Shown here: positions 1 to 36,833 of the stretch, in pieces
How the letters are laid out: the number at the start of each line of letters is the position of its first letter
Position numbering within the stretch: the stretch's first letter is position 1
NCBI GenBank assembly: GCA_964200185.2
Contig: CAXNAD020000041.1
Span: 1-37,163, forward strand
Length of the DNA: 37,163 bases
DNA from: Choristocarpus tenellus KU-1152
Taxonomy: Eukaryota > Protista > Phaeophyceae
Direction: 5' to 3'
The notes under the pieces: generated by a model
What the model was told of the DNA's origin: nothing
What the model saw: the letters and a program-made list of their open reading frames with translations, nothing else
Databases searched by the model: none
Program-made: the position numbers and the translations under genes

Positions 1-1560
1 AAATGGACAGCCGCCACCCCCTCCCAGATACTTTGAGCCAATATTGATGTCAAAGATTTTTAGACTGCGGTACATTGAAGGGTTGAATTTATATCGAAGA
101 ATGCACCACCATAGCACCTGAACTATGACACGAAAATGGTCAGGTAGTTGGTTCCTTGTTCGAGAAAAAACGGGATCATTTGATACAAAAGCATTAGACC
201 ATTTCGGCAGCCCACCATCATTGTGAGCTAGATAGCCTCTACTGCGACTATCTACCTAGCCAGAGCACAAATACTTGCAAGTTGAACCACTGGGCAACCA
301 ATATTTCGTCCTATAGCAGGATCAAGACTCCACGCGAAGCGTATGCCCACAGCCAGGGTTCAAACAGGATCCCTAATGTAGGAGAGATTTGCAGGAGAGA
401 AAGAACACCTTACAATGAAGTCCAAAGTTCTCGGGCTTAGAAGGGAGGCTGTGACTTCTCAATGATGGTGGAGGAAGGTTTTGATGATCCGCATTAGTGG
501 TCGTCAAAATATGATCGCTACGTATCTAGCTCCGGCTCCTGTGACGAGCATCTATCTGAGCTGCTTCCAGAATAATGGTCACTTACGCATGTAATTCGAT
601 CTCTGACTGCAGTACTTGGTTTGACCATTTTCCAACCATTTGAACTAGTCGGTCTTATGACATGCATGTAAGAAGTAACGATTTGAAATGAAACGCCATA
701 AAAACTTAAATCTCCAATCCCTCTTTATCATATCATGCATCCAACCCAAAAAGATATCTGTAAGCAATCACTTCACGGCAAAGTATCACATCACATACAG
801 GGGAGACATTTATCGTTCTCAACCTCACATATTTTCCCGGTCGGGATCATTTTCTAGTCATGTTTAAAATGTAGCGCAGGACTTCAACATGATGAGAACG
901 ATTCCGAAGTCCACCATGGGGATGACAAAGGGCAGCAAGGTTGATCTTTCCGGCAACGAGAATGCGAAGGAATCTTTATCACCTTCGCACACTCGAGATC
1001 TAGCTGTCCTCCCCCTTGGCACTGGGGGTATCACATTCTCCCACCTGGCCGATGCGGGGAGCCCTGGTGCCAAAGAAGAACAAGAGGTTGTTAAATGCGT
1101 TCTTCTCCGAGAGAGCTATTTGGAGAGAATTAAATCTGTGATGAAGGGAAATGGAAGAATGTTGACCAAGAGAAAGCGGCTGCATGATCAACTAGAGGGG
1201 CTATTGGACATGCTACGCGTTGCAACAGTTGAGACCGTGGAAGCAATTCAAGCTTGGCGTCATGCCCAGGAACACTCAGCTCCTTTTTTCTGGAAAGCAA
1301 CCAACTACCTACTCAAGATACCCTCTGATCTCGATTTGATTGATTGTTCTGAGGTAAGAAGCCAGCGGGTAGAGGTCCAATGTTGTACTACAAATTGGTT
1401 CACATGAAGGGCATACTGTAGACGGAAGAGGACACCAGAATCAAGAAGGGGGTGTACGTTATGAATGACGCACCAAAACGTGAACGAAAAGCACTGCATC
1501 ATCGGCTATGTTGAAGACTCGAAAAGGAATTAGTTGATGAACTGTGAGCGATGAGACTTA
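1..1560. promoter_or_regulatory. CpG-rich (island-like) 5' region of gene 1
   Basis: Manual count of ~25 CpG in 481-1080 versus ~1 in 4021-4620; overlaps first exon; boundaries approximate. Confidence 0.5.
889..1353 (+). CDS. Gene 1 exon 1
   Basis: ATG 889; EEQEVVKCVLLRESYL...FFWKATNYLLKIPSDLD; donor GAG|GTAAGA at 1354. Confidence 0.85.
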
Positions 1561-4500
1561 GAAGAGGCACGAAAGGGCACTATACAGGAATGTGTTATTC
1601 AAAGTCGTAATTAGACTCTAGGCTCCTATATTAGATGCTTGATTTGCAGTCACTCAACCTGCTCTTATGCGATACCCATAGAACGTTGTAAAAACTATTT
1701 GAAGAAAATGTTTCTGATAGTCTCCAGAAGTACCCCAAATACTAACATTTTGTTCTTGAGCCAAACCGATTCAGAGGTAGGCAGTTTTGGACTGTTTTGT
1801 ATTTCAAGTCATATTTCTTACCCTGTTCAATGCACTCTATTTCATTGCTTTATGTGCACAATAGTGTACGCAAAATTGATATTCCCCTTTCCACACATAA
1901 AGTGAGAACACAATTCAGCAAAGGCTCTTCTGTAATGGTAAAATTGGATCTTTCTTCCCTTTCTTGGGCATCCTTAGAATGTAACCCTGCCTACCTCTTA
2001 GTTGGTTTGGCACTATTGAAAAGTCAGGAATAACCAAAATAAGACCACTTTTGGCAGAGAGTCACCACGAAACCTATGTGCATGTATTCTCATGTGGCTA
2101 AGAGCTCTGTGGGGACCATATATGTGTGGGAACGACCATCCTGGTAGACACACATGCTGGTGCTGACAAGTGGTTGTACATGGTTGTTGGATGAGGCACA
2201 AATTGCGTTAGTAATACCCGCTCACACATCAACAGCATTCAGCACTACTTTCAGCAGCCAAGGTGGGACAGAATTCAGCCTTTGTGCAGCTGCGATGTAG
2301 AAAATGTGACACATGGCACCTGGGTGGATCAGTGATACATGTCATGGACATAAGTATGTTTATCAATCTGTCTACAAAAGAGGTACTCTAAGCAAGAACG
2401 AAAAATTGAGGGTTAACCGCAAGAACAGTCATTGTACAAGAAGATTCGAATTCTGCCATTGTGGCTTTGGGCCTCATTTGACTCTAAGCTCTAAGACTAG
2501 TCTCAAAGTTTGTTGTACTTTATATATGTGTATAGCCTTGAGTTTCTGTGGCATGTCCAAGGAATGAAAAAATAAGAATTCCACTGTATAGGAAGCCCAA
2601 TAATACAGTTCAGTCTACAGAAAATGGAGAAAGAACAAAAAATCATACCTAAAAGTAGTGAAATCCACTTTAAAAATTATTAGTGCCATAATGATCAGCA
2701 CACAAGTACATGCATGCAATACTGTTGCCTGCTGCCCATGGGTTGCAAACAACCTTCAGTATCAATCTTTTCCTGAAATATTTGGTGATTGTGCAAGAAG
2801 CTGCCATGAAATGACTGCAAATACTTCATTTCCAAATTTAGGTGGACTTCCTTCCTGCTGTTTGTTCCAAAACATCGTATACAAACACGTTTTTGAAGAG
2901 AGGGTTACTATGACTGTAGCTGTACACATCTTTCATACATCCCATTAAGTACAAACACATTCTCAGTAATAATTTTACACCAACAGCTATGTAAACTTGT
3001 TGGAATCCATACCTTTCTATCCTCAATTTAATAATGTTAACGACATACTTTGGCCCTCAGATCTCCAGGGACAGGTGTTAGATTCGGCAAGATTTGTATC
3101 GAGGAATCTTGTATGCACTGAATTCATGTACTAGCGGTGTGAAGTGATCAGTGAAGAAAGACTATCAAGTGAATATTGTTGCTAGTTATAAGTTGTCAGT
3201 ATCTCTTCTACTGGACAATTTTGTACAAGTTGGTACAGGTCGACAGACTCAATATGGTATGGTCTTCCCAGGCAGTTGGTACACATATTGCTATAACAGC
3301 AATAACCAAATGATTTTGCTTGTCCACAGTTTGCAAGAGCTCCTACCGGACTTACGGATTGGACAGATTCATCCACAGCATGCAATTTTTGCACTATGAC
3401 AGAAACAGGCATTTGACACCTAACTACAACCAAGAATTGTCTTCGTTTAATTGTGATTTTACTACCTACCCCGATCATGTGCATATCATGGACACCACTC
3501 CCTCATCCACCCAGCCTTTTCTTGCATTGGCATTTGAGATGGGGGTGGAGTTGTCAATTACCCCACCTGTTTAATCTTTGATCATGACTAAAGCAGCTCA
3601 TGATGTTCTCAATATCCAAATTTCTTTCCTTCGAAAGTCTTTGGGCGTGTACCAATTTTTTTTCAAGATATGTTCTATGCAACATCTATTGCATTCTCTT
3701 GCCTTGGCTCACTGCACATGTGTGTTCTCCACTTGGTATAGGTCTGCCTGCACTCAGCATGTACCCTTTCCTCAATTATATTTGTTTCAAAAATGTGCAA
3801 AATGAAATCATCCTGTATAAGAATAGAACTACTTAACATTTTTTCAATGGCTGCATAACTGGGTCGTAATGTCATTTTTTTGGACTGCATTCTTGGATAT
3901 TGAGTGAGAGATATGAGAAAGATAAAGTGAAATAGTGAATATCAAGCTGGCTATTACTCTGCGATCATTTTCCACAACACTTTGTTGAGGAGGATTTCAA
4001 AGTGTCCTGAGTGTCCAAAGTGAAATCCTAAGTTTGAATCCCTCCAGAAGCAAATTAGAAATCTGTGGAAGACTGGGTGTGGGTCAACACCTTTCAGAGT
4101 GGGGCACCACTTTGCTACTACTTATATTATATGTGATGGGAGAAAAGAGCCCCTAAATTGCTTTGTAAATTCAGGAGTGGCTCCTCTGAGGTACACAACA
4201 CAGTGCTGTGATGTGCAGCCTGGAGGTTTTATACTCATCCATCAAAGAGTTCCCTTGGTACTTTTTAGAGCCATGGAGGAGATTATAGATGGTGTATGTA
4301 GTCCAAAACCATACAGGTATTCCTCACAATGAATGGTAGGGGAAGAATCTCAATTTTTTTCTAGTTGATAAACAAGCATACACTTCCTACCCCATATCAA
4401 TATTTTGTATGTGTGATGTCTCTCTCATGAAGAGTTGAACAGAGGGTTATGTAAGTAGAATTATCTAAACCAGTAAAAGTAATGATATCTATACCCCCAC

Positions 4501-7500
4501 CTTGGTGATCCTGCTAATGTGTCTACATCTATTGAATCTAGAATTTTGGAGTTGAAATATATTTTATGATTAACTTCGATCATCCATGGACAAGTAGAAT
4601 GCACTGTGCAACTACAAGAGAATGTTGATGAATATGATGGAGAACAGCATACTCTTGGGTCAAATTGGTGAGCCTCTTGACATTAAGATATTGAGCATAC
4701 CTTGAATCTATCTGAATTTTTTGGACAATAAAAATATATTAATCTCAACTTGTGGTGTCCTTGAACAATTCCTATGGGTTCTGTTCAGTTGTTGAAATGA
4801 TTCAAAGTAAACCAACCATTGTGCAATATACTCTTGTGGAGCTGAAAGTCATTTCAATGAGGACAATGTACATCAACATGATTCGAAGTATACTTTGTAT
4901 TTAATGGACCACGTAGCCATTAATTAAACCTTCTGGACTGTGTAATGTATATACTCAAACCCAATAAATCTGTATTCTGGAGCAATTTCCATGCATTATA
5001 CAACATAATTATATATTTGCCATAATCCTAATGTATTATGGTAAGAATAGCTCCACAACACTTAAGTAAAAGGTGCAATATATTAATGTATGGCACAAAT
5101 CATGTCCTCCACACATCTTTGCAGAGAGATCTCTCTCCACAATGATATGCTGGACAGATTGCTGGTAATGAAACATTGATTCTGATCCATTTTTCACAAG
5201 GAATCCAATAGTCGTTATCCCATATACATTGATTCCTACTGCAGAGTGAAGTATTTCCATCTTGTGGAAAAGTTATCCAAGATAACACCATACCCATACT
5301 CTATAAAAGAAACTTACCCATTGTTCCAAATAGCGTTAAAACTTTCTGTATAATAGTGTAAACACTTGTTTTTTTGTATCAATTTTCTCTTTCAACATAA
5401 TTTGATCATTATTTTCTGCTAAAGCTTCATGATACTTTTGCACATGATAAACTCAACGTTTTGATTCCCTCCAAGGGCTCTGAAAAAGTACACTATAGGA
5501 CATTAGAACAGTCATTTAGTTCACAATATTTGTCAAAGTTGAATTATGCCTTTCCCCTCTCATCTAGTGCATGCCGAACATCAACTTGACGTTATTGATT
5601 TGATCTCTATAATCACATCATTTTCTCTGCAGGATATTCGTTTATGGCTCGGTTTCAACCTGACAAGGAATCCATTCATTGTTCCAACTCCTTTGGTACA
5701 TCACCCTGTTGGGAACCCTATGATAGCTGGGTCTGTTTTGCCGATGGACATTGAAGGCTTCACTGTTGTTGGAGGAAGGAGGACTCAATTGACCCAGAAC
5801 AAGTCAGGAAACAGCTCAGCACGCCAAATACACCAAAACTTACTGGGTAACCCACTAGGAGGTGGGGGTGTCATTGGAGACATGGATATGTTGCGTGTGC
5901 GAGAGGCTGAGAAGGTTATCCTGCAGGAAGAAGAGATTCATGGCAGGTGAGAGTCATGGATAGGTCAAAATTGCAATGCACCTATCCATATCAAGGAGGC
6001 AGTTACAGCCCACCAGAGTTTAAATACTCTGGATTAATAGAGCTTTAGTCTTGTGCTGTTGTTTTTGGCAGATGGGAAGGACTACACGGTATGCACCTGG
6101 TTTCTTGAGTAATTCCACAGGTGTAGATCACTGACACACTTACAACACACAAGCATAATCTTGAGAAGAATGCTTGTGATGACTTCAACCAATTTTCCTA
6201 AAGATACATGTCTTGTTGCTACAGAACATCCTGCTCTCAATCACATCATCCAGATATGAGCAAGATAGCTCATCCAGGTTGATTCCAGCAGCAAGTGCAC
6301 TCTGCAGCTCTTTTTCAAAAGCACTTCTCCTTGATGATCACCGGGAACTACTGTCACCCGCACAAGTACCTGTGCCCTTAGCCCCTTTTGCTCACATAGC
6401 AGGGGTAGGTTGTATCACACAAAACCAACACATGGCACAAACTTTGCTTGTGCCACCCACGGTTAAGAGAGGTGTGGGAGTACGTCATGCCTCTGGAACA
6501 GCAAGCTCTCAGCGCTCTGGGGGAAGACTCTACCCTAGCAGTATGGTTAAAATGGAATCACGTAGAAGGCGCCCTCTTAAAAGGTGTGTCTTTGTTGTTG
6601 ACGTGATTTTTCATTCTGATACAGAATGATCCTTTTATTTCCAACAGTTGCCTCCTTACTTAGGACTTTTTTTTCCAAATTTCTAAGCCATTTGCCCTGG
6701 GAGAGTTTCCAGTGACCAATAAAACAGGTTGATTAAAAGCTGCCAAACATTCCTTATGTCCCCTGGTTGCAGATCATTAGGTGCTGCACTTGATGCTGAG
6801 ATGACAAGGCGGAGACAGAAGAATACACAGCTGCAACAAGAACTACATCAAATGCACTGTAGCCTTCAGAATGCTCGGAAATGCCTTGCACATGCAGAAA
6901 ATATGGTTCAGCAAGATGTTGCCCCTCTGAATGAGACCATTGAAGATGAGAATATGAACAACATTTTTACAGATGTCGATGATCTAACTCCTGCAATTGG
7001 GTGTTTGAGCAAGGAATTCTCCAACAAGAAGATGGAGCTAGGTAGAGATATAATAATGCTCCAACAAAAGGAAGAGGAACTTGAATATGACAGCAAAAGG
7101 CTCAAGGCCATGCAGGAGCAATTAGATGTTTTCAAGGAATTGGAGAGGAACAAGCAAGACAGGAGGCGAGGGCTTACCCTTGAACGTAAGAGGAGACTTC
7201 TTGAGCAGGATCTTGATATCCAAAAACGGGCATGCGATGTAAGCAAGTACACTATAGAGGATGTAGCTGCAACTCAACTGCAACGTATTGTCCGTGGTGT
7301 ACAGCGGCGTGCCTTTGTGAAGCTTTTACGTCCGATTTATGACAGGGCTGCTACAAGCATTCAGCGAATTGTGAGGGGGCACCTTGGGCGCTCCATGGCC
7401 AAGGTTAAACAATACAATCTAAATGCAGCGACAAAAATCCAAATGGTGATCCGGGGTCACATTGGTCGTGCTGTGTTTCGAAGAGAGCTCCACAAATCCA

Positions 7501-10500
7501 AGATGAATCGAGCAGCTCAAATCATCCAATGCGAGGCACGTAGGAGAACAAGTCAGCAACGAGCCGCAAATAAGCGCTGTCTCTTGGAGAGTGCCAGACA
7601 TGGAGCAGAAGTTGTTAGTGTCAGGCAGTTATTCCACCAGGACATAGTTGAATTGGCAAATGCAATTAAGGCACCATTGCTAGATGGTACCATCAACCCT
7701 CCCCCCAGCATTGTGTTAGGACTCATTAAGGTTGTAGAGCTCATGTTGATTGGAAGTGGAAGCGCCCATGACATTATTTCACATTACAATACCATTGGTG
7801 TCAAGTATGAGTTTGAGATGCGACCTGAAAATAGATTTGGGTGGCGAAACGCTCTTCGCCTTCTCCAGCGGACATCAAAGTTCTTTCGCCGCTTGCGACA
7901 ACTAGCAGAGGGACCTCAAAGTAGTCGCCCACGGATGCTACACCTTTCAAAGGAAGCTGTGCAGACCTACAATGCCCTTAAGCACAACCAAGGGTGGGGA
8001 GTAGCGGCCATGGGGCAAGTGGGAGCAGGAGCCAAGGCATGTCAACAGCTCACCTTGTGGGTGGACTCCTTGCAGGAAGTATTTGCCTACCAGCTGCAGT
8101 TTACAGAAGATCTCCAGGAGAATTACCCAGTCTGGTTGGAACGAGTACAGGCAAGCAGGCGTTGCATGCGTCATTTGGAAGTGCAACATGCAGTCTGGAA
8201 ACGCAGTTGTGAAATTGCAGATCAAATACTCCATGAAACAAAAAATGGAATCACAGACCACCCTGGAACTGTCACTTGTGAGAAAGTGGATGACTCAAGT
8301 GGAGTAAAGAACCACGGCAGGAAGGGTGATTTACGGGTTGTTGTTGCCGAGCGAGGTGTAACGTCACTAAGAATCCAGGAGGCAGCTATACAAGAAGCAA
8401 TCACTGAGCTGCGAAGAAGTGAGGAAAAAGCCCAGCAAGTAGACATGGGTAAAGAGCAATTCCATATGCACACGGTAATGGAGGAACTAAAACAGGCAGA
8501 AAAGAATGTTGCAGATGCCAAACACCACTTCACCACCACTCGAGTCAGAGCTCAAGATGGTGACAAATCTGAGCAAGGAAAGCTCCCTGTCCTGCTAGAG
8601 GTCATGACAAACTGTGAAATTATTCGAAGGGAGTGCTGGACAAAGGTTGAGCTTGCACGAATCCAGGGGGAGCGAAATATGAAGAGACGAGGTGTGGATT
8701 TGATTATTTCAGGCGACGTACGGTTGAAAGCACAGGCTTTGGGTGAGTTGGAGGCTGCACTAACTTTAGCTGAAGAAGATCTAAGATACTTTTATGACAT
8801 GAGAAAGATGGTGCCAGGGTCAACAGACCTAACGGAGATGTCAAGCTCTGATGTGGCTGTGATACAAGGACTTAAAGAAAAAGAAAAAGATACAAGAACT
8901 CAGGCAACCATGGCCAGAGCTGCGCTGGAAGCAATGGAAGCTGAAATTGAGATGACGTTCACCAGTGCGGAAAAAGCAGAGGTGACATGAAGACCATTTC
9001 CACTGTAACATTTAAACAAATGCAGCACTTAAGTACAGTCCAGAGCTTACACAGTCAACATGCAACCAATGCCCAGGTTCTAATTCCCATGCTCAGATGC
9101 AAAGCAAGACCAGGATACCTCAAGAGTGGGATAATCCTACTCTCGAAGAGTATGAGGAAGACGTTCGTGAGGATGAAAAGTGCGCTCAAGAGGAGTTGGA
9201 AATGAAGCAGCAATATGTTCCGCAAAGCATTCTTACTCGACCGTTTGGGCGACCACGACCTTTTGTAATTTGCATCAGTCGAGATGTCCCAGCCATTGCA
9301 AAGAAAAACATGGTAGAAAGACTGGTCAAAGATTTACCCGGACTCACCATGCATCTTGATGAGGAGACAAGCTTCGGCCTTCATCTTAACAACATCCAGA
9401 AGGCGTTATCGGCGAGGTGATACAATTAAGGGGTGCACATTATATCATGTGTAACACACCAGAGTAGGCTGCCGAACGGTTAATTTGCCCTTGAATGTTC
9501 TAGACAGAAATGTTTATATCTCTTCACACATGCCTGTACTCAGTCATCCCAGATTGTCTTATCTGGACTCCTAATGCCAGAGTCTGTTTACCACGAGTGA
9601 TAGTGTTGGCCTCAACGAAAGAGAGGATTAGTGGTCTTACTTTAGGAGTACAATGCAATGCATGCACCCTCTAAACTTCCTAGGCAAGATGTAGGCAGGA
9701 CAGCTTGAAGATCATTGAACTATACAAGTCACCACACCTTTGAAATGATAACAGCATTACAGTAATTGTAATACTCACCACTCAGGTATTGTGTGGTGTG
9801 CAATGTGGATGTTGGCATTGGACAAGGGTCCAGGAGATCATTTCTCCAACATGCCATTGTTACGAGGGAAGCCCTCATCCCTGTACCCAATTTGATTCTG
9901 GTCAAGGGGGAGAATACCAACCGCTTAGGTGAACCTCATGAATTGCACTTGGGGTGCGATGAGACTGACTTGAATGTTATGAGGGATGGACAGATGAAAC
10001 GATGCCTCCAAAGTGCAGCCCAAGCAGTAATGGATTTCCAGCAACCAGACCTAGTTGACATGATGGAGAAGCTGGGTCAATTGGAGAAGCCACCATCACC
10101 AGCCTGTCATATCATAATGGAGGCAACAATTATCCTGCTCACGTCTCACAAGACATTAAACATCACCCCTTTCTCTGCCTTGAGCGGAGTGTCGTGGATG
10201 GAAGCAAGGCAACTGCTCCAGCATACACAGCATTTCCAAGCTGCTATCTTGGCAGTGGATATCTATTCAATTCCTCCATTGAATCTATCATCTCTACAGG
10301 TGTGTGCCTGACTCACACTCCCTTGACAAAGGTAGGTTTACCCTTTTCCACACAATACCATAACGTACTTTGACAAGTGGGATAGTCAATTCATTACCTC
10401 TGTAATGTTGTACAGGCTTACATTACTCACAAGGAGTGGCCGCCAAGAGGGTGCATTGCTGCCAGCAGCAATAAAGTCTTAGCCCACTTGTGTGAATGGG

Positions 10501-13500
10501 TCTCAGCAGTGGTAACTTTTGCCACCCTGCTAAGGAAAGTTGGTGGAAACGCCCCAGCTGTGACACGTCGTTCTCCTGTTGAAGGCCTGTTTCACTCAGT
10601 GGTGCAGGTCCAAGATGGAAACTCCAGTGGCAATGAGCTAGATGCAGACTCCAAGAGAGGGTGTGTACTAATCGCACATTTAGCCATATATACGATAGCT
10701 TACCATGGACTAAACTTGTTCAAAAGCTAACAGATGAAACAACTTTGTGATCAGAGAGTCCTCCTGCTGCCACAAAGCTGAGCACGAATGTCTTGATATG
10801 ATAAGTGATTTGGAACGGAATTGCTGTAAGGAATTTGGACTCTGTTGTTGTGTTTGTTGTATTTCCCTGCCTTACACATTCTTTCTTGTCCCACTCATTG
10901 CAACATCTGCAAAATGTCAACGGGTACGAAATAATGCACAATGCATGATCATATTTTATAGATTTCCCAATAAGTGGGACACGTGAAGACTAATAACATT
11001 CTGTGGAGCATACTATTATTAAATTGGGGCAACGACATGCAGTGTGAATTAAATTTCTACCCAAGGATCTCAGAGTACCTAATGAAGTTATGTTAAGAAA
11101 CATTGAATGAGAAAGACAACTCCTTTGATAAAAGATTCTGCTAGAATGTCCAAGAACCCTCACATTTAGTCTGAAGGTGGAACGGCAAACACTATAACCT
11201 CGGATAGTTTCTTGCATGCATCTGTAACAATATTTCACTGTGCACTTCTGAATCTGAGGTGAAACCATGACGAGTTTATCAGCTGTGGGGCAATACGTCA
11301 AATGTACGTATGTGACATAGTGTTGTTTGAAAACATTTTCAGGTGGTTAGCCGCATATTACTCTCTATTGTCCTCAGTTCTGGAGGATGTACGAACTTTT
11401 CGGATTGCAAAGCACATCAAGGGGGCCAATGAAGCATCCAGCACTGTTCATATGGTTGAGGTGGGAAGAAAAAAACATGGGAAGCGTGTGCACTAATCAT
11501 GAAGTATGACTGCAAATTCACACCCTCTTTTATCATTTTCCTGATCACTTGACCTTCACAAATTTCGTAAGCAGGTTTATCAAGAATGCAAACGGCTATT
11601 TTTCAGTGTATATAACCCTGAAACATGTGTGAGGCACATTCTCTCCCTGGATGAAAGTAAGGTATTTGACGGCTTCATCCTTTGTTGTTAAGTTTGCATT
11701 TTCAATATGTGCAAGGTCCCTCCATGTATTTGGAAGGGATAGTTTGGACTGTTGCATACAGGTTACCTACACAGCATGCGCATCTAAAAACAAATGCAAA
11801 ATGTAAACACAACATTTCCTCCTCTAGGTCAGTCACCTCCTTGCACCAAGATTGAATGAATGCTCAGAGTTTGGCCCAAAGACAGTGCCAAAAGATCATG
11901 AGACCGTGATGGTCCGCCTCATTGAACTGCTCCACTTTCAAGAACTGCGGCAGCGTCAGGTAGGAATATCCCTGGGAAGCAATGAACTGACTTTGTCACA
12001 GATGAAATGCTGGTTGTTTGGCTAGATGGAATTCATATTACCTACTTTTCAAATATTTACACATTGAAGTATTTACACCTTGAAGTGTTGGTGAAGTGAG
12101 GATTTTGTGTGCTTTGAAGTACTCAGTGTGTTTCTTGCTACCATTTTAGTTCGTATCACCTACAACTAGTTATCACCTTTGTTGCAGGCATAATTACTGT
12201 TGTTGTGTTTGTTTTATTCTCTGGTTTACAATTGTGGCCTCTTGTCCCCCCTCCCCATGAAAACATCTGTGAAATATCAATCGACATGGAATATTTTGAT
12301 AGATCTACTTTTGATGTCTTTTGTCATGCAGGGTGGCGGGAAAAAACTGGTTTGCCAGCGCACATTACAACGCCTTCTTCGTGAAACAAGACACATATCA
12401 GGCCATCTGGCTGTTGTAACAGTCTACGAAGAGGCCAGGGGAGAGATCCGGTGTCATGTCTACCTAGCATCTTATTCAGCTAGGCTTGAGTATAATGTTG
12501 ATGCTGCAGCAATTAAATCTGTTCTTCCAGATAGCAGCATCTCTACAGGAGAGCGTGATGCTTTGGAAAGCGAAGATGCAAGCAAGCTCCTCACTCCAAT
12601 CACAGATCGCCTTGCGATATCGCCTGCCCTTTCAACAATTATTGACATGGGTGTACGACCTAAGGGTCTGATGGGGCGGGTAACAAAGAGCTGCAGTCAA
12701 GGTTTCCTTCTCAAAATTCGTCGAAAGGTGTGTAAAATAGGTTTGTGATGCATGTATAGTACTTTAAATGTGAAGATATAGAGTGGTGTAGATCCTCAAC
12801 AGGGGAGTTGTAGATGTCAAGGGGAAATTGTTCCAAGATGCATTGAGCCAGCTCTCTATAAAGGCTATGTGCAGTTTGTACAAATGTAGTTGTGTTGGTA
12901 GCTCAAGATCCAGAAAAGAACAGAACCTATGGGAAACAGTCTGACCGCTGGTGGATCTTTACACATACTGAAAGATAAGGTTGATACAAAATTTGGAAGT
13001 ATCAGCTTGATTTTTTTTTAATTTGGTTTTGTTTTTAAATTATTGTGGGTTGGACAATTGTTCATTTATCACCCTTTGCAGACTAAGGATTAGAAGTATT
13101 GATGGCATGTTCTGAATTAATCCCGCTTTCAAGATGGAAATGAATCAATATAATACTTCACTCTTCAATTGTAAAATACTATTTATTGCTGTTGGTAAAG
13201 GTAGTATTAGCAGTGTTGTGAATCTAAGACTTATTTAATACCATAAATGTTACATCCAGTTAGTCCATATTTTTTTGTAAAAGCAGAAACGTGATATTTT
13301 ATTCTTATCAGCTGCTAAGGAATTTGTCGTCAAAATGACATCTTTCTGAAGAAATATTATTCCATCAAGAAGAACACTAAATAAACAGAAAGTGAGTGAA
13401 ACTATGAAGTTGGCATTATGACATTGACTCTTAGAAAGAAAAATCTTTCCAAGAGAAATATCTGGTGGGCACAGCAGGAAAGAGGGAAGACCTGGAACTT

Positions 13501-16500
13501 GGAAAAACAAGAATTAATGTCAATCATACTCACAAAACTTTTCATCTTTCCCTTGCAAAATTCAGGGGGGAAATGGAATGAAGGGCATAACCTGAATAGA
13601 TACTGCAGCCATTAGGAATGGATCGAAAAAAATCAACTGAAAAACTTTCCATGTATTCAAGTATCGTCAGAATGTACACAAAATACATAGGGCAATAATG
13701 CCCCTCACCTGGTGAAAACCTACTGTTGGTGAATTTTTTTGAGGTGGTCTTTTTGTTCACTCCTTCATTTGCTTCACATTCTGCTACTCAGTGATAAGCT
13801 TAACCTGTGTCACATCAGACTCCTGGTCATTTTCATCCCACCCTTTCTCTCCTTGCTATCATCCTCCAAATGCAATAGAACAGATTATGTGGCGGATAGG
13901 TCAAGTTCATACTCATATGATCTAGGTACTCACCCCCACCATCCTCAGTTAAGAGTATCCAGTCACACTCATGAACAGCTCATGGAGTCATGGAAATGCT
14001 CGGGGAGCATGTTTGTGTGGTCCACACACTCCAAATTACAAAAAACATAGAGATTTTGATTTGGGTCGATTGCAGTTTTACCAAATGCATTATTATATTC
14101 CTACAGCCCATCGCACAAACCAGTGAACTTTTAATTACATACAGTGGATTTATTATCTGAAAATGTAATGTTTCCAACTTCCAAAAATGTGAAATATGCA
14201 GAGGTGTATCAAAGGAGTTGTTAAGATATGTTCATTCCTATCATAATGTCATTTTACTTGAAGCCTGCACCCTCCAAGTAGATTCACCATCAATGAACTA
14301 GGAACTAATGTCATCAGTTGACTCTTCTGCTATTATTAGCAGTCATGCAAGCATAGGGCAGATGCTGCAGGTGCTCCCACTGCCCTTGCCAACCTCGATT
14401 TCAAAGGTCATTTCATGCAGAGCTCCAATTCATAGTTCCCATCATAAATTCAAATATCTGTATTGTACTGATCGGCTCCACCAAGCAAGCATGCAATCAC
14501 CGAGCAACAGCTATGCATGATGGGACCTGACTGTCTTGAAGCTTTCATGGGTTCAGCTTCGTAAAAATACTCAGTATCACAATGAGCCAATGTATCTTAG
14601 AGGGTAGAGCCGTGTCCATTTGAGGACCAACATTCAATTTTGCGATTTTGATGTAATTTTGGCTGTTGTGTTTGTTAGGAAGTGTCAATATCTTTGTTTC
14701 GGACACATTTTTTCATAACATTTCCATCTTACCTACTCTGAAACATTTTGGAGTAGGGAAATGTCATATAAAAATCCCGAGGGATGCCAAGCCCCAAATG
14801 GACAAGCAGGGCAAAACTCGTACACTCTAAGATAACTTCACTCAATCCAGGAGCTAACTGGGTGGAGCACGTTTCTGATAACAAGTTTGTTGCCCTCCTT
14901 CAGTATTCTTTTTGCTCTGAAACTCTCTCTGCATAAAAGGTAGGACACCATTATTACCCTCATGAGCTGCACTTCCACACCTACTCCAGAAATGAAATTC
15001 CATGGAAAACATAAGCAGGAGGCATTTCTGAAATCAAGTTTGACTGAGAACTATTTTCAAAAGGGACCTAATGAATGTTTTGGCAGATGTCATTAGTTTA
15101 TTGCCACTGTATGGCAAGGTGAGGTGTTTTCCACCCAAAAAATTAGCACAACATAACTCTTGAAGAAAAGCAAAATTTTCACACAGATCTCATCTACTTC
15201 TTTCTTCTGATGAAAAATATGATTACCAACCTCAAACATCTAAGGAAGATCAAAAATTTTAATCTCCATGTCCTTACAATAGATTTTAGAGATGAAATAT
15301 CCACATTTTTGAACTATGAGGTCAAGATATTTATTTGGGAAGTAACTGAGGTCTGTATAGTCCTTTTTTTGTACTTACCATGATCCAACCAGTGTACATT
15401 CAAGATATACCTTTCAGTGTAAGATTACAATGTATAGTATATATTCTTTGAAGAACTTGATTGTATACACATTATGGAGCAATAAGCATTTCGTGTGAAT
15501 GGATCCTTTAACAACTTGAATTTATCCAGAACTATGTAATGTCAGATACAGATCGACTTGGGGTGTGTATGAAAGCCGATGGTGTCAGCAACATTTACGA
15601 ATTTCAATTCCTTTGCATTCTAGTACACCACTCATGCAAGTACTGTGCAGTTCTGAGTACAAAAGTGTAGACCATCTGTCCTTCCATCTCTCTACCCGTC
15701 TGTGTATTACCAGTACCATCTCTAATCCTCACACTACACCAGTGCTAAGTACTTCTGCTCATTTTTTTTGCTAAGTTCATAGTTTTAGGATAAGTTGCCC
15801 GTTATTCTTGTTATTGCAAACCAGACACCCATGGGTTGGGCCAGCCTTAACCAGCTCTAATGAATTGCTGCTATCAGCTCTTCTTGGTACCTACCACCTA
15901 TCTATCTGCTCATCATGGTATGTCTCGCAAGTTCATAATTTGGGCAATGTCTCTCTCACACTTCTCTAAATGCCGACCATGTAAAATTTTTGTCGATACG
16001 TGTACTCACCTCTATACTTGTACCTGATTGATTGATTGTCTCGTATATCTTCTCACAATTGTCTTACTCAACGCATCTTCTAATAATACTGGTCTACCAT
16101 ACATTGATAGAATAAGGGGCATGCATGTGTATATATATATATATTGATAGGAACTATCATCCACACTAGAAGTATTCAAACCTACAGCAAGTAGTATATA
16201 GTTCCTAGCAACCAACCTTCCAATAGCTCTCTCCCCCCCATCACCAAGATCACCTCAATCATGCCACATATACTTGATCCTCACACCTCTTGTGGGCACC
16301 CCATGAGTGGCTGAGGTCCCTCGCAGAGGGGTCCTTTAAAGACATGGCAAATAAAAGTATATTTATTTCTATCCAAAGTGTTGATAATAACTTACCATAG
16401 TGTTGATGATAACTTACCATAGTGTTGATGATAGCTTACCATAGTGTTGATGATAACTTACCATAGTGTTGATGATAGCTTACCATAGTGTTGATGATAA

Positions 16501-19500
16501 CTTACCAGCACAAGTCTACTTTCCGCACCTTTTTTTGAAAAAGGGTGGTCCCGGCAGGCTTCTCTTCAGAAAGGTGTATCAAATATCAGGGGCACTTCAT
16601 GTGGTGACTGTGTTAGAGCTTGGAAGAGGAGGCATGCTCCGTGTGCTTGTATACAACAATATCACAAGTATTGAGTGTGAGGTGTCCATCTCCTCCACTG
16701 AGCGTATCTGTTTGGGCTACGGGAATGATAGCTGGAAGTCATGGAACTCAGACATGATTCGACGATTGAGTCTGCGAAAACCAGTTTTAAGCAGCTATTT
16801 TGAAGGAAGAAAGAAAGCAGACACAGGAAAAGGACCTCTGAGGCATTCGGATAGGGCACTACTCTTCGACAGAACAATACTATTTACCACTTTGCGTGTC
16901 CCTAAAGGGCAATTAGCCTCAAAGGTTATGTTTGTTCGTGCATTGCTTGTAGATGCAGGAGAAGCCCTAGCCATTGAACTATACCAAGTGGAAGTATCTA
17001 GTCAATGCCGCATCCTCCTCTCTGCTGCACAATTGGTCAAGATCATTGGAAATTCAAATGTAACTCTGATACCACCAACTGATTGCTTGGAACCAAGTAC
17101 AGCAAATAGCATGGTCACCACAACACAGTGTGCAAAATCTGAAGATTCCCCCAAGTTAGGAAATACAACCATGGCACTCATACTGGCAGGAAAAAAGCAA
17201 AGGGAGCACATTCTGCAGTGTATAAAGAGCAATCTACATTACTCTTCAGAGGAAGAATGTGTATCTCTCACAGTTGGAGATTTTTCAGTCCGTGCCATAA
17301 TGGCTGTCCCTGTCAACTTGGATGAAAGGCGGCCTCAGAGAAGTGTATGTTCAACTTTCTCAGGAAACACTGACCCCTCCAATTCTCAAGCAAGAGAACC
17401 CATTGGCTTTAGGGAACAAGTTGTGAGCAAGAAGCGCCAGCCTGATATTACCAGGTACTCATATATGTATGGGGAGGATGAGTCAGGTATTGAGCACTAC
17501 CCCCGACCTCAAGACGCTGAGAAAGAAAGAGCAGCACAGCTTAGAAGGTTAGTCTATTTTCTTCTAGGCACTCCATGTGGAATTATATACATAAATACTC
17601 TGGAGAATATATATATATATATATATATGCTGTAAAGAGCTTCCTTCCCCTTTCCTTTCTACTCAAGTGATCACCACACTGACTATGATGTTCCTCGATT
17701 TTTTGTGAACTTAGGGAAGCTGCCAAGACAAAAAAAAAGCTGAAACATGAGAATAAAAAACTAAAAGGTAGTGGGGAAAAGAAGAAGAAAAATAACCTCT
17801 CGAGGCACAAGGAACGCAACATCACTGCAAAAAAAGATAACCCCAGCAAAATTGAGAATCAACTCAGTGTACAGGGAGATCTTGACCTGCTGGAAAGTCC
17901 CAATGCGGCGGTAAGCAGAAAGTGTTACAGCACCAAAATCCCCACATGACAGACACCATTGCTCATGCCTGGCTGAAGAAACAGACATTTTTTTTAATAT
18001 TCCTTCCTCAGAACTTTGTTTCTTATGGTAATCTTGCTTTCTTTGTCCACTTACATGTGTGATTGTGTCAATCCATCCCACTGATATGTATGATTTGCAT
18101 GAAACTGTGAGAATTTATATATATATATATATATTTGTGACAAGAAATCTTGTGTTCCTTATGTGTTACTCCCTTAACTCCTCTCCAGGATAACACGGAG
18201 GAAAAGGACCCCATTGCCTCCAAAAATATTGTTGAGTCCAGTCCGCTTGACACAGAAGCTGAAACATGTACTTTTAAGGAGGCTATCAAAGTCAGGGTTG
18301 GTGGGTGGGAACAGCACCAGCCCGCATGTGATGTTATTGTCACAGTTTTTGAGTCTTGGCTGTCTCAGGGAATCACACCTGCTTCTACTGATGGCATAGA
18401 GGGGGACAAACTCTTCCGTGTTGTTGTATACAACCCCAAACTGGCATCATGTGCAGAAACCTTCATTGAGGGCAAAAATGACTTGTGTGAGGTGAGCAAG
18501 TGATTTCATATAGATATTCCGGAATGCATCATATCATACTCTTCAATACTGACTCTTGATTGAATGGTTTAACTTCTTCTTCAACCAGGTGGCTGGGCCA
18601 CTCAAGCAAGAGTTGGTGACTGGCAACACTACTTTGGATCCACTTTTCCACTTTATTTTCCATGAACGCATGAAAATCATGGAGGGTACTTGGGACGAGG
18701 AACTTGACTGCTATGTTGCCCAAGATACAAAGTTTACAGTTGTGCTCAAACGCAGTCGGTTGTATCGGTCAATTAAGCAAACTCCAATTCACCTAGGAGG
18801 GGATAAGGATGCAGAGGCAAACAAAGCTCATATCATCAAGGACAAAGAGCAGAGGGGAAGAAAGGCATGTAATGAGTTATACATGCATACAGCAGATTTG
18901 GATTAAGCCATATATCAAGGGGTACAGAATTGCTAACACAGTGCATGTTAGAAATACTTCACTATCAGCAGGTAGTTGCATCGTCTGGGAAAACCATAAC
19001 ACAGACTAGACTGTTGCAGGAGTTAGAAAATTGTGTTTACCCACGTAGTACTGTACTCAATCAATACTGGCATTGGCGCACAGTGGAACTTGTTAATGTG
19101 TTACCCATCCTTGCAAGTCCTTAGCAGAAGCAAGGGACCACATTCCTCCTGCGAAAACTTAGCAAACGAATGTAGAATGCTATGCAGAGCTCTTATCCAC
19201 ACCAATTACGATTGGCATACATCAGGTGTTCCGTCGAGCTCTGAGAATCAATGGAGCACTATTCCAGGTCACTGCATATGATCTGGTTGGCAATAGGGAC
19301 ACAGATGGAGCAGTCCCAACAATGAAGTTCATTGCATATGAATCGAAGAAGCAGACACAGGTGTTTGTTGCCAACAGAATATGCTCACAATTTTTTTTCC
19401 CATTAGGTTTGTACCAGTTCATTTTTGGAACCATATTGTGGTTGGCACGACATGATGGTGAGAAAGTACACTCATGATTTGACTAAGTCCACTTTGTGAC

Positions 19501-22500
19501 CCATATAAATGAGTGTTGTACTGAAGAATGCACCCCAACAAGAGTTTATTTTGCAGCATTTGTCAAACTCTAGGTAGATGTGTGTTCTTTCTCATCACAC
19601 TTTGTCTCACTTCCATTGAGCAGCTTGTCACCTTGGTGAAGCCTGAAGCTGTGCTGGAAATTTGTGGTGGTGTACACTCACCATGGCTTGTCCAGGAAAA
19701 GCGCACAGAGCTAGCAGGAATCGTAGCAGAATCTCTTCGGATCAAGGTGCATATATGTGACCTTTATGGAGCTGAGAACAGATTCGATTATTGTGATGAT
19801 TGGAGTGATTACATGATGCAGAAGTACCCCTGCTATCTAGAAGACTTTAGGTTTATGTCCACTACATCAATAGTGGCTATGCTGTAGTATACTAAAGGAC
19901 ATAACTGTCTTAGGAGGATTCAATGGTAGACCCTGCAAAAGCACGTGGCTAAAATTTTGGGTCTCTCACAAATTTTATTAATACCTCTGTGCAACATGGG
20001 AATGGCGTGAGAACTTCATGTGTGATGAGAAATAATGCTCTTGAGTAAATGTATTATTCGAAATTGGAAATAATTCAATTGCAACTTACATGTTGCACTG
20101 TATCAAATGGCAACTGTGATACTCTATCAGTTTTCCCATGGGGGAGAACCAACTCTGGTGGTTTCCTGGTCTGGTGAAAAGCTAGGATATGCGGATGAAA
20201 CATATAGAGGAGAGCAGATTCGTCCTCCAGAGGAAAGGACACTGTCCCGTTCAAGAAGTGAAGACTTTGAAAGACTAGCAGCTTTCAGCACACGCATTAC
20301 AGATCTTGAGGTGAGTGATGAATCTTTCCATACAATTAAATGGGTACAGGTGCCTACAAAAATATTGAGTTGGTTGGCATCTCAGCTGTCTATGATATCC
20401 ATTGTGCTTGTCTACCTCAGGTGGTTGTGACAGTGATAGTTGAGGCTAGAGAAAAGGCCAATATGGAGGAGGCAATCGCCAAGGGTGATGATGATATCAA
20501 TTTCCCAACACTCATATTCAACATCTACTGTCCTAAGCTAGCAGCAAGCACCGATGTTGACTTGCCATACCCTATGCAGAGGAACATGACAGGTGATGCT
20601 ATTATCTACCACTATGGGTGTTCTGCAGGTATTCTGAACAATTGACAAGATGAGAGCAATTTAAGACATTCACAACCTCTCCATAGGGAGCAGTTGTTCA
20701 TGTGAACATTTTTTCTTTCAATGTCTTTTTTCACTCTGGAAATTCAGTTCTTTTGTGACGACAGTACTACTTCTAGTGTATACTACTGGTCCTTAGAGTC
20801 ACCACCATATTATCCCAGGCCAGAGCATATTGCAGTACTCTGACGGAGAGGCACGGTCTTCAGCGCTCCATCGTGTTGTTCGCTACCTCTGCCTCAGTGA
20901 CGATACAGAGATAGATCCAATGCTTGAAGGGCGTAGAAGGCTGAAGGCAAATGTAAGCTACAAGAAATAGATACATCATTGCCCTTAAGTACCTGCTCCT
21001 GACCACCTCGATGCTTAAAAAGATGCTTGATGGGGAACCAAATTATTTAGTTTTCATGCCGACCAACCCAACAGCCCTGCCTTCTTTCACATGTCAAACC
21101 TGTTTGGGAGTTACTTTGTCCCCCTCATCAAATAAGAACAATGAGAAGATGCCCCTTCATTGATGTCCTTCATTGTTGTACTGTCTTGTTCTCCAGAGTG
21201 TTATGGTTAGGAACAAAAGGACTCCTGTGGTGATTGCAGATTTGAAATATGAAGCAATACAGAAAGGATCAAAATTATGTCATACTCACATGTTCATACT
21301 TTTTTTACCAATTGTGCAAAAATGAGCAAGACCATACCTTTTCAATCCCAAGAACCATGTAACTCATTTTGGTCAATACATCATGACACCTGTTGAGGGA
21401 GGTCATGAGCAATTACAATAGCTTAGAAATTTAACCTTCTGCCTCGAACTGTCTCAATGTACAGCAGCAAGCAACTTATGATACAAATTCAAGGTGGGGC
21501 TGCTACAGGTGTGTATACTGAAACTATGCATGACGCACAAACAGAAGTAAGGTATGACAGCACCTAATACTATACTTTCTGAGTAGTTACCAATTATAAT
21601 TCAATTTTTTATGTCAAGAAGAGTAAGAAGTCACCAGTGTTGTTTGGCTACGTAGACCAGTTGCATCTTGTGTTGATATTATGGTCTAAGAGCCCTGCAA
21701 AATGTCTTAATCAAACAAAATATTCATGAAGGGCTAGTAGGTCAATAATCCGAAGTGTTCCTCAAGGGAAAGCCAAGTTGTTGGGAACTCAGGTTGTGTT
21801 TTAAGCTGCAAACAGTAAACAAACAGCACCACCGCCCTTTACTTAATAACCCTCAAAATCGATACAACCAAACAGAAGGTTACGAGAAGTTTATCTGGGT
21901 GGGGTATGTGCATGCGTCATACTTGGGTTGTGTCAGGTGCACTACAAGGAGCAGAAAACATGGTTGGCTGCCTACAACAACCTGGACACATCAGATGAGC
22001 CCTCTCTACAAAAAACCATAGGACAGCCCTTGGTTTTCATACCTAGCGATCTTGAAGGGGACCTGGTCCTTTGCAAGGTGAAGATGATTCTTTTTCAGGA
22101 GATGTTCAATGCAGCATATGGTATGCATTTCATTTACTGGAAAAGTGGAATACAGTACTCTTGGTCAAAGGCCTGGTCCCATTCCACTGGGTTTGTGAAA
22201 CATCCAGTTTGGACCCTGAACCGTTTAATTCCTGGAACAGTGTGAGTGTGTAATACACCAATCCAGTTGGTACAGCCAGTATGGACTCACAAGTCCAGTC
22301 ACCAGATGCTTGTTTGGATTGAGAGCAGGTATGTTTGAGTTCAGATGCACTGTCCTGGCTGCTTGCGTCAGTGGTTGATGCATCAGGTAGGCCATTCTCC
22401 ATAGCTGACTTTCTGAGCTGACCCCTCTCTCACCAACAGCTATTGGGCTGGACTAGGCTGTGACTACACAATTGATGTGTTACTACCATGACACATGACC

Positions 22501-24815: not shown

Positions 24816-25052
24816 AGAAAGCACCTTTTCAGCAGGGTAGGTATTAATCGACACAACTAGCATTAAGCAAGATGTTAAACAAGGATAAAGTGCAAGTAGA
24901 AAGAATCATTTCACCTCTTGCAGTGGTTGTGTATCACAAACTCATTAAATTATTCTCAAATATTTTACTGTTCACAGGTCTTTCATTACACTAAAGTACA
25001 AAACACCATATTGGGCTGCATCTGAACTCCTCCATTCCACCCTATTATGCCA

Positions 25053-25224
25053 TTAGCGGTGTCGTCGCAATGCCCAGTTGATGGCAAATGCAGCAGGAAT
25101 AGCTAAGCTAATGCCCACACCAGCCCCAAGTCCAGTCCAGAAGGCCTTTTTCCTGCCCAAAATTATGGCCAATGAGGAATTGCATTCATGTTTACTCAAA
25201 AGGATGTCGGAATAATCCAAAGTT
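25053..25224 (-). CDS. PPIP5K: PPIP5K putative terminal exon with hydrophobic C-terminal helix
   Basis: ggcag|A ACT TTG (phase 2); ...[33 protein letters not shown] (TAA 25055-25053). Confidence 0.6.
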
Positions 25225-36434: not shown

Positions 36435-36487
36435 GGGAGTGAGTGATACAGTATGATAGATGGCCTTGTGAAGGGGGTAAAGAGTAC

Positions 36488-36569
36488 AGAGTATGTACAG
36501 TAGAGTATGTACAGTAGAGTATGTACAGTAGAGTATGTACAGTAGAGTATGTACAGTAGAGTATGTACA
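36488..36569. repeat. 14-bp minisatellite, ~6 copies (AGAGTATGTACAGT)
   Basis: Perfect head-to-tail units. Confidence 0.95.
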
Positions 36570-36833
36570 ATGCAGTTACTTCGGTTAGGGTGTGTGTTAG
36601 GGTTTGGCAGGGCCTTTGTAAGTGGTATAATGAAGTTTTGAAGGCGTTAGGGGGTAACCATTTCAAAGTACTCACACCCTAAGAAAAGGGGGCATGGGGG
36701 AAGTCTGTCAAAACAGATAGGAATCGATAGAGGGGCTTTCAACTTGGTGATGGACGGATGGATTGATGGGTTAGGTTTAGGGTTAAATGCATCTATGAAT
36801 CCAACAGAAAAAAAGTTTTTTCATCAGAGGTTA

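What the first reader, a model, noticed from the sequence alone, without database searches (positions are those of the whole stretch)
7266..10515. Motor-less protein carrying two dynein-stalk-like microtubule-binding modules next to IQ motifs
Seen: after 3-4 IQ motifs come two segments. Copy 1 (~7638-8072): DIVELANAIKAP...PPSIVLGLIKVVELML...WRNALRLL..SKFFRRL...AKACQQLTLWVDSL. Copy 2 (~10051-10515): MEKLGQLEKPPSPACHIIMEATIILL...SWMEARQLL...FQAAILAVDIYSIP...LQAYITHKEW...LAHLCEWVSAVV. Established: the dynein heavy-chain stalk MTBD has the pattern E(I/L)xxxxxPPxxVxxVMEAVxILL...WxxAKxLL...F...D...I...Y...S.A...LCxWVxA. Copy 1 is flanked by long coiled coils as in the dynein stalk, but no Walker A or AAA ring is visible in the protein. 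Inference: a calmodulin/centrin-regulated, non-motor microtubule cross-linker or brake, possibly flagellar or cytoskeletal. This is the best candidate for an undescribed system in the window.
Basis: partly seen in the sequence, partly recalled or inferred. Interest (0 to 1): 0.8.

Follow-up and report, generated by a model that had tools for sequence, protein, structure and literature searches.

The report
Motorless protein with two dynein feet
A brown alga and many of its relatives (other algae, water moulds, a marine flagellate) make a large, unstudied protein that has two copies of the microtubule-gripping 'foot' of the dynein motor but no motor; one copy sits right behind calmodulin-binding motifs, so it may be a calcium-controlled microtubule anchor.

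Summary
Confirmed in its core. The window carries one spliced, transcribed gene of about 24 exons. Its public model is a 2,623-aa Choristocarpus tenellus protein (P0048).

Both segments are dynein microtubule-binding-domain (MTBD) homologues. Profile E-values against PDB dyneins are 1e-9 (copy 2) and 3e-4 (copy 1). AlphaFold models (pLDDT 93-94) match dynein MTBDs at Z 12.7-14.5. No AAA ring or Walker A was found.

Corrections:
(1) Copy 1 has no long dynein-like stalk. IQ4 runs straight into its short base helix, and the long coiled coil behind it is absent in oomycete and MAST-3 orthologues.
(2) Copy 2 is inserted into a P-loop kinase fold that lacks the P-loop motif.
(3) Copy 1 keeps dynein's tubulin-facing motifs; copy 2 has mostly lost them.

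The family spans stramenopiles: 111 clusters at E<1e-30, and 82 of 89 long homologues have both copies. I found no paper on it. A Toxoplasma microtubule-bound chain, probably ICMAP2, has the same fold. The scan noted other motor-less dynein-stalk genes elsewhere in this genome (not tested here).

Best reading: a calmodulin/centrin-gated static microtubule tether. Microtubule binding and flagellar location are untested.

The parts
889..24815 (+). Whole gene, about 24 exons; public model P0048 (2,623 aa, 5'-partial; ORF ATG at 889)
   Evidence: spliced joints in run X2
1078..5692 (+). Conserved unnamed N-terminal helical domain (aa 1-112; exons 1078-1353 and 5633-5692); no Pfam or PDB match
6786..7232 (+). 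Coiled-coil-like segment before the IQ motifs (aa 312-460)
   Evidence: sequence composition; not folded
7263..7577 (+). Four IQ motifs (aa 471-575; the fourth is degenerate here, canonical in Pylaiella and P. infestans); IQ4 lies on the same helix that enters copy 1
   Evidence: Pfam IQ; pattern counts; model helix 2-40
7578..8096 (+). Copy 1 (M1): dynein-MTBD fold with short base helices (aa 576-748); conserved H1 D-x-x-E-L, H3 W-x-x-A-x-K/R and H6 G-S/A-K-A-C; basic H4
7770..7820 (+). Beta-hairpin between H2 and H3 of M1, at the position of the axonemal-dynein 'flap' (flap position from own knowledge); absent in oomycete copies
   Evidence: model strands 93-98 and 104-109; alignment
8130..9231 (+). 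About 310-aa helical/coiled-coil spacer (exons to 8981 and from 9097), present only in ochrophyte-type members
9253..9987 (+). First four strands of a P-loop nucleotide/polynucleotide-kinase-like fold without Walker A (loop S/A-R-D-V/L-P; no GK[ST] in 68 rows); exons 9097-9417 and 9787-10299
9988..10541 (+). Copy 2 (M2): dynein-MTBD fold (aa 1205-1350) inserted in the kinase-like fold; split by intron 10300-10415; core conserved, H1 and H6 surface not
10584..11394 (+). Last strand and helix of the kinase-like fold after M2 (aa 1365-1407)
   Evidence: model strand 295-299 and helix 317-332; kinase alignments span model 6-333
11380..24812 (+). C-terminal half: at least 6 copies of an unnamed ~90-aa repeat (first copy modelled as beta-meander plus helices)
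   Evidence: iterated HMM; model; no Atlas hit

Best explanation
A stramenopile-wide, non-motor scaffold that acquired dynein microtubule-binding domains and uses them as a static microtubule tether, most likely in the flagellar apparatus (axoneme, basal body or roots).

Shown: two MTBD folds, no motor, IQ4 on the same helix that enters copy 1, and copy 2 inserted in a kinase fold that lacks the P-loop motif.

Inferred, step 1: copy 1 is the main tubulin-binding site, docking through H1, H3 and H6 as dynein does, with its hairpin possibly touching the next protofilament. Step 2: calmodulin or centrin on the four IQ motifs stiffens the lever, and the one on IQ4, next to the base of the short stalk, shifts or blocks the base helix. 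Ca2+ would then set microtubule affinity, standing in for the ATP-driven helix sliding of dynein. Step 3: copy 2 plus the pseudokinase is a rigid structural or protein-binding unit with weak or no microtubule binding. Step 4: the C-terminal repeats and the N-terminal domain anchor partners.
For: Fold and profile matches for both copies. In 78-79 copy-1 rows: D597 72/78, E600 72/78, W664 79/79, K/R669 53/79, K/R728 74/79; these columns align with the H1, H3 and H6 motifs of dyneins. Copy-1 helices H3 and H4 are net basic (+1.9, +2.9); mean column conservation of H1 and H6 is 0.50 and 0.45 in copy 1 versus 0.29 and 0.29 in copy 2. A single helix runs from IQ4 into the MTBD base. The best profile hits are axonemal dyneins. 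The architecture is kept from brown algae to oomycetes and MAST-3. Chain 9ya2_L of a Toxoplasma intraconoidal-microtubule structure has the same fold (Z 10.8); its 162 modelled residues fit ICMAP2, described as microtubule-bound and needed to hold two microtubules together (PMC12819142).
Against: No binding, localisation or stage-specific expression data. PITG_09411 was not found in the held supplements of a P. infestans flagellar-gene catalogue or three RNA/genome papers; the catalogue was built by comparative genomics and the held files may be cut. The family occurs in Aureoumbra lagunensis, which from my own knowledge has no flagella. Several of the most conserved basic residues of copy 1 lie on H4, which is not a known tubulin-contact helix in dynein. 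Oomycete copy 1 is more diverged at H6. The same fold also matches a non-dynein-sized chain of the bovine sperm axoneme (9fqr_Xl) whose role I could not establish.
Confidence: 0.45

Rival explanations
1. Two-headed microtubule cross-linker or brake: both copies bind tubulin, and the spacer sets the distance between two microtubules, long in ochrophytes and short in oomycetes.
For: Both copies are kept in 82 of 89 long homologues, with two discrete spacer classes, 306-514 and 43-77 aa. Copy 2 is the closer match to dynein by profile and structure and keeps basic residues on H3. Probable ICMAP2 bridges two microtubules.
Against: Copy 2 H1 and H6 are not conserved (0.29; basic residue at H6 positions in only 14/68 and 4/68). 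Some paralogue-like relatives (P0173, P0179, P0198) keep copy 1 but have no detectable copy 2.
Confidence: 0.22
2. Both copies are pseudo-MTBDs used as protein-interaction modules in a calmodulin-binding axonemal or basal-body scaffold (radial-spoke-like or regulatory), with no direct tubulin contact.
For: Only 13-21% identity to dyneins. Conserved arginines on H4 of copy 1 and the H-x-x-W-P motif of copy 2 are family-specific surfaces. The fold also matches a non-dynein-sized sperm axoneme chain, 9fqr_Xl (Z 9.2-10.3), possibly the radial-spoke protein EFCAB5 (a guess from length).
Against: Copy 1 keeps dynein-like motifs on all three tubulin-facing helices across deep divergence.
Confidence: 0.23
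3. A microtubule tether for a non-flagellar structure (spindle pole, cortical array, cytokinesis), regulated by calmodulin as ASPM is.
For: Spliced RNA exists in a culture run of unknown stage. A member occurs in Aureoumbra. No link to flagellar gene lists was found.
Against: The closest dyneins are axonemal, flap-bearing ones. No aflagellate downy mildew or pennate diatom appeared among the named hits, but few hits were named.
Confidence: 0.09
4. A decayed dynein fragment, a fused gene model or an assembly artefact.
For: In run X2 one contig retains the two introns between copy 1 and copy 2.
Against: One contig of run X1 (possibly the assembly's source) spans 6000-11900 with no difference. 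Exon structure is shared with other loci. Intronless orthologues encode the full chain. The family is conserved across stramenopiles.
Confidence: 0.01

Closest known systems
Dynein heavy-chain stalk/MTBD (Pfam PF12777 MT; DNAH1 8i3j, Chlamydomonas DHC2 in 8glv, dynein-c 2rr7, DNAH7 6rza, mouse dynein-1 3err)
   Same: Helical MTBD fold (Z 12.7-14.5, rmsd 2.3-2.8 A over ~126-131 aa for the best rows), PP..V motif, H3 tryptophan, return-helix W-V, H2-H3 insertion at the flap position; copy 1 keeps the H1 and H6 motifs.
   Different: No AAA ring, linker or tail; only short base helices instead of a long stalk; two copies per chain; one follows IQ motifs and the other is inserted in a kinase-like fold; 13-21% identity, below the Pfam cut-off.
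Toxoplasma ICMAP2 (TGME49_224700), probably chain L of PDB 9YA2
   Same: Large non-motor protein; the 162-residue chain matches both copies (Z 10.8 and 8.2); ICMAP2 binds the outer microtubule wall and holds two microtubules together (PMC12819142).
   Different: Chain identity inferred from size only. No sequence match (not among the hits). The papers report no recognisable domain for it and do not mention dynein in the text. Apicomplexan.
PDB 9FQR chain Xl (bovine sperm 96-nm repeat; residues 1342-1495)
   Same: MTBD-like fold near the end of a non-dynein-sized axonemal protein (Z 9.2-10.3).
   Different: Identity not established (EFCAB5 is a guess from remembered length); no sequence match.
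P-loop nucleotide/polynucleotide kinases (Trl1 kinase, PNKP, PFKFB, APS kinase, guanylate kinase; AAA_33-like)
   Same: Five-stranded alpha/beta core, Z 7-9; Atlas neighbours AAA_33 and RapZ.
   Different: No GxxxxGK[ST]; an MTBD is inserted before the last strand, about where such kinases carry the lid; middling Z, 8-15% identity.
DNAHX non-motile dynein heavy chains (PMC11785096, title and abstract only)
   Same: Dynein-derived protein described as non-motile.
   Different: Described as a dynein heavy-chain subfamily, whereas the protein here has only MTBDs; the paper was not read further.

Membership tests
Dynein heavy chain | Ring of six AAA+ modules with Walker A in AAA1 | tested here: not met
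   Pfam finds only IQ in full-length orthologues P0042 and P0037 and in the window exons scanned; no Walker A pattern in P0048
Dynein heavy chain | N-terminal tail and linker (DHC_N1/N2) | tested here: not met
   No Pfam hit. The Atlas feature match of copy 1 to DHC_N1 clusters had low recognition, and the fold search gave MTBD instead
Dynein heavy chain | Long antiparallel CC1/CC2 stalk | tested here: not met
   Copy 1: return helix ~29 aa then a break; stalk alignment ends at model 209-212. Copy 2: ~16-22-aa base helices
Dynein MTBD domain | Six-helix MTBD fold with CC1/CC2 base | tested here: met
   Z 12.7-14.5 on models with pLDDT 93-94
Dynein MTBD domain | Sequence-profile homology | tested here: met
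   E 1e-9 for copy 2, 2.8e-4 for copy 1. The window protein itself is below the Pfam gathering score (13.8 vs 24 bits)
Dynein MTBD domain | Conserved tubulin-facing motifs on H1, H3 and H6 | tested here: inconclusive
   Kept in copy 1; H1 and H6 not conserved in copy 2. Helix roles are from own knowledge of dynein-microtubule structures
Dynein MTBD domain | Binds microtubules | not testable with these tools
   needs co-sedimentation or cryo-EM
P-loop NMP/polynucleotide kinase | Alpha/beta P-loop kinase fold | tested here: met
   about 30 kinase rows at Z 5.5-8.9 spanning model 6-333; middling Z
P-loop NMP/polynucleotide kinase | Walker A GxxxxGK[ST] | tested here: not met
   0 of 68 rows; loop is S/A-R-D-V/L-P
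IQ-motif calmodulin-binding proteins | IQxxxRGxxxR motifs | tested here: met
   Pfam IQ 21.7 bits above the 20.3 cut-off; 2-5 pattern matches in each of 11 members checked
IQ-motif calmodulin-binding proteins | Binds calmodulin or centrin | not testable with these tools
   needs pull-down

The most novel reading that the evidence does not exclude
A class of non-motor microtubule-associated proteins built from the dynein foot, in which calmodulin/centrin bound to an IQ lever replaces the ATP-driven stalk as the affinity switch, giving stramenopiles a Ca2+-operated microtubule clutch in the flagellar apparatus; motor-less MTBDs of this kind also exist unrecognised in solved structures (probable Toxoplasma ICMAP2, a sperm axoneme protein).
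Probability: 0.25. Interest if true: 0.85.

Novelty: new variant of a known kind. Interest (0 to 1): 0.62.

Why it matters
The dynein MTBD is normally treated as part of the motor. Here it sits twice in a motor-less protein conserved across stramenopiles, once directly behind IQ motifs and once inside a kinase fold without its P-loop. If copy 1 binds microtubules under Ca2+/calmodulin control, it shows that the MTBD affinity switch can be run without ATP, and it offers a candidate for Ca2+-dependent control of the two unequal stramenopile flagella in gametes and zoospores. It can be tested in Ectocarpus or Phytophthora (PITG_09411). The fold match to a probable ICMAP2 chain suggests that motor-less MTBDs are a wider, unnoticed class of microtubule-associated domains.

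Tried and rejected
Single-sequence phmmer of either copy against PDB found no dynein. The copy-1 profile from mostly brown-algal rows also found nothing; only the diverse profile did. Pfam MT does not detect copy 1. The Atlas feature hit to the dynein tail DHC_N1 was rejected: recognition was low and the fold contradicts it. BLAST self-comparison does not see the internal repeat. The N-terminal domain and the first C-terminal repeats had no Pfam, PDB or Atlas match. TTLL11 'MTBD-like' refers to TTLL6/7, not dynein. Paper searches found no description of this family or of PITG_09411 (supplements 102, 106-110). The T. brucei paper for chain 9e5c_2e was not held. The tree is a quick, midpoint-rooted one and was not used for order of events. 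The origin of the two copies (one duplication or two captures) was not tested because no dynein sequences were available to scripts.
Full report
Gene and organism. The region belongs to one + strand gene from about 889/1078 to 24815 with about 24 GT-AG exons. A search with the Pylaiella orthologue returned P0048, a 2,623-aa NCBI protein of the brown alga Choristocarpus tenellus whose contig has this window's length; it matches the window exon by exon. I used P0048 by reference and built no joined sequence. Contigs of run X1 span 6000-11900 without a difference (X1 may be the assembly's source). Run X2, of unrecorded type, shows five GT-AG spliced joints, including the 116-nt intron inside copy 2, so the gene is transcribed. 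One X2 contig retains the two introns between the copies. The exon layout is shared by loci L001 and L002, and intronless orthologues encode both copies in one ORF, so the single-chain reading holds.

Observation. Single-sequence searches see only IQ. With homologues the signal is clear. The copy-2 profile hits PDB dynein MTBDs at E 2.4e-5 with 9 rows and 1e-9 with 68 rows; the best hits are axonemal chains (Chlamydomonas DHC2, DNAH1). A 19-row diverse copy-1 profile hits dyneins at E 2.8e-4. The two copies match each other (hhalign 94.5%, E 7.7e-8; shuffle control 49/79 versus 0/474). AlphaFold models have pLDDT 92.9 and 93.8. Foldseek ranks dynein stalk/MTBD entries first for both. VIA-align gives copy 1 Z 12.7 (6l4p_B, rmsd 2.4 A, 126 aa) to 13.3, and copy 2 Z 14.2-14.5 (rmsd 2.3-2.8 A). 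For copy 1, Z near 13 is modest for a helical model; the profile evidence and the fact that the top five rows are all dynein MTBDs carry the claim. No AAA domain or Walker A was found.

Corrections to the anatomy. First, copy 1 has no long stalk. One helix runs from IQ4 into the base of the MTBD (model 2-40). The return helix (180-208) ends at a conserved P-x-W. The next two helices match two-helix hairpins on their own. The spacer between copy 1 and the next domain is 306-514 aa in ochrophyte-type members but only 43-77 aa in oomycete and MAST-3-type members. Second, copy 2 is inserted before the last strand of a five-stranded P-loop kinase-like fold (kinase rows at Z up to 8.9 span model 6-333). 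Its P-loop position reads S/A-R-D-V/L-P and has no GK[ST] in any of 68 rows. Third, the copies differ on the face that binds tubulin in dynein (H1, H3, H6; own knowledge). Copy 1 keeps D-x-x-E-L on H1 (72/78), W and a basic residue on H3, and G-x-K before the return helix (74/79), all aligned to dynein's motifs. It also has a basic H4 and, in ochrophytes, a beta-hairpin at the position of the axonemal flap. Copy 2 keeps its hydrophobic core and H3 but not H1 or H6 (conservation 0.29 versus 0.50 and 0.45). The rest of the chain is an unnamed N-terminal domain and at least six ~90-aa C-terminal repeats without known relatives.

Family. The profile of aa 585-1410 finds 342 representative proteins at E<0.001 and 111 at E<1e-30. 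Named members are brown algae, Chrysoparadoxa, Ochromonas danica, Aureoumbra, oomycetes (Lagenidium, Globisporangium, Pythium, Phytophthora including PITG_09411) and MAST-3. All are unnamed, hypothetical or 'IQ/calmodulin' proteins. Every member named to a eukaryote species is a stramenopile; one is labelled 'archaeon' but groups with Ochromonas. The large search was used because Pfam and the word search left the range open.

Mechanism. Best reading (0.45): a static microtubule tether, probably in the flagellar apparatus, with copy 1 as the main binding site. In dynein, sliding of the base helix sets affinity (established knowledge). Here that helix carries IQ4, so calmodulin or centrin is placed where it could set affinity in response to Ca2+. 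Copy 2 in its pseudokinase would be structural or a partner site. The folds, the helix continuity in the model and the conservation pattern are shown; binding, gating and location are inferred. Rivals: two-headed cross-linker (0.22), non-tubulin scaffold (0.23), non-flagellar tether (0.09), artefact (0.01).

Comparison with what is known. It is not a dynein: ring, tail and long stalk fail. It does contain MTBD-fold domains. The wide fold search also returned chains that do not look like dyneins: 9ya2_L (Z 10.8), 9fqr_Xl (Z 9.2-10.3) and 9e5c_2e (Z 7.7). 9ya2_L has 162 modelled residues numbered 1207-1457. This fits ICMAP2 (1,678 aa), whose resolved globular domain is about 10% of its length, binds between protofilaments and keeps two microtubules together (PMC12819142). 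Neither that paper's text nor PMC10774369 links it to dynein. The chain identity is my inference. It gives a precedent for how this protein may work and lowers the claim of a first-ever motor-less MTBD. Ten paper searches found no description of the family. Earlier scan notes report other motor-less dynein-stalk genes on other pieces of this genome; these are unchecked leads.

Verdict. A real, conserved, undescribed family with an unusual reuse of the dynein foot, easy to test but with no functional data. New variant of a known kind; interest 0.62.

Noticed in passing
window 8052-10294 (run X2, record 7): A depth-63 contig starts at about 8052, retains introns 8982-9096 and 9418-9786 but splices 10300-10415. 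Loose ends at 8051/8052: one matches window ~2287-2316 in intron 1 (shared short word, possibly template switching), the other is not in the window. This could be intron retention or a shorter transcript lacking most of copy 1.
   Followed up: partly
window 8271-8309: The public model removes a 39-nt in-frame 'intron' that run X2 does not skip; the frame is open either way.
   Followed up: partly
window 11380-24812: At least six copies of an unnamed ~90-aa repeat; about 5-8 are detected in full-length homologues.
   Followed up: partly
window ~25050-29410, minus strand: Exons that read like a PPIP5K/Vip1 kinase-phosphatase gene, tail to tail with this gene (recognised by eye).
   Followed up: no
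PDB 9ya2_L, 9fqr_Xl, 9e5c_2e: Chains of non-dynein size in Toxoplasma, bovine sperm and T. brucei microtubule structures match the dynein-MTBD fold; I found no remark on it in the papers read.
   Followed up: partly
P0173, P0179, P0198 (L006), P0143 (L007): Divergent paralogue-like relatives keep M1 and a weak kinase-like domain but have no detectable M2 (P0143 may simply be partial); P0198 (3,786 aa) adds a C2 domain.
   Followed up: partly
P0051: Labelled 'archaeon' (EON65) in NCBI but groups with Ochromonas danica in the tree: likely a mislabelled chrysophyte bin.
   Followed up: partly
window 16385-16505; ~32840-33130; ~36300-36650: Short tandem repeats (a ~24-nt unit before exon 16544; low-complexity arrays near 33 kb and 36.4 kb).
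   Followed up: no
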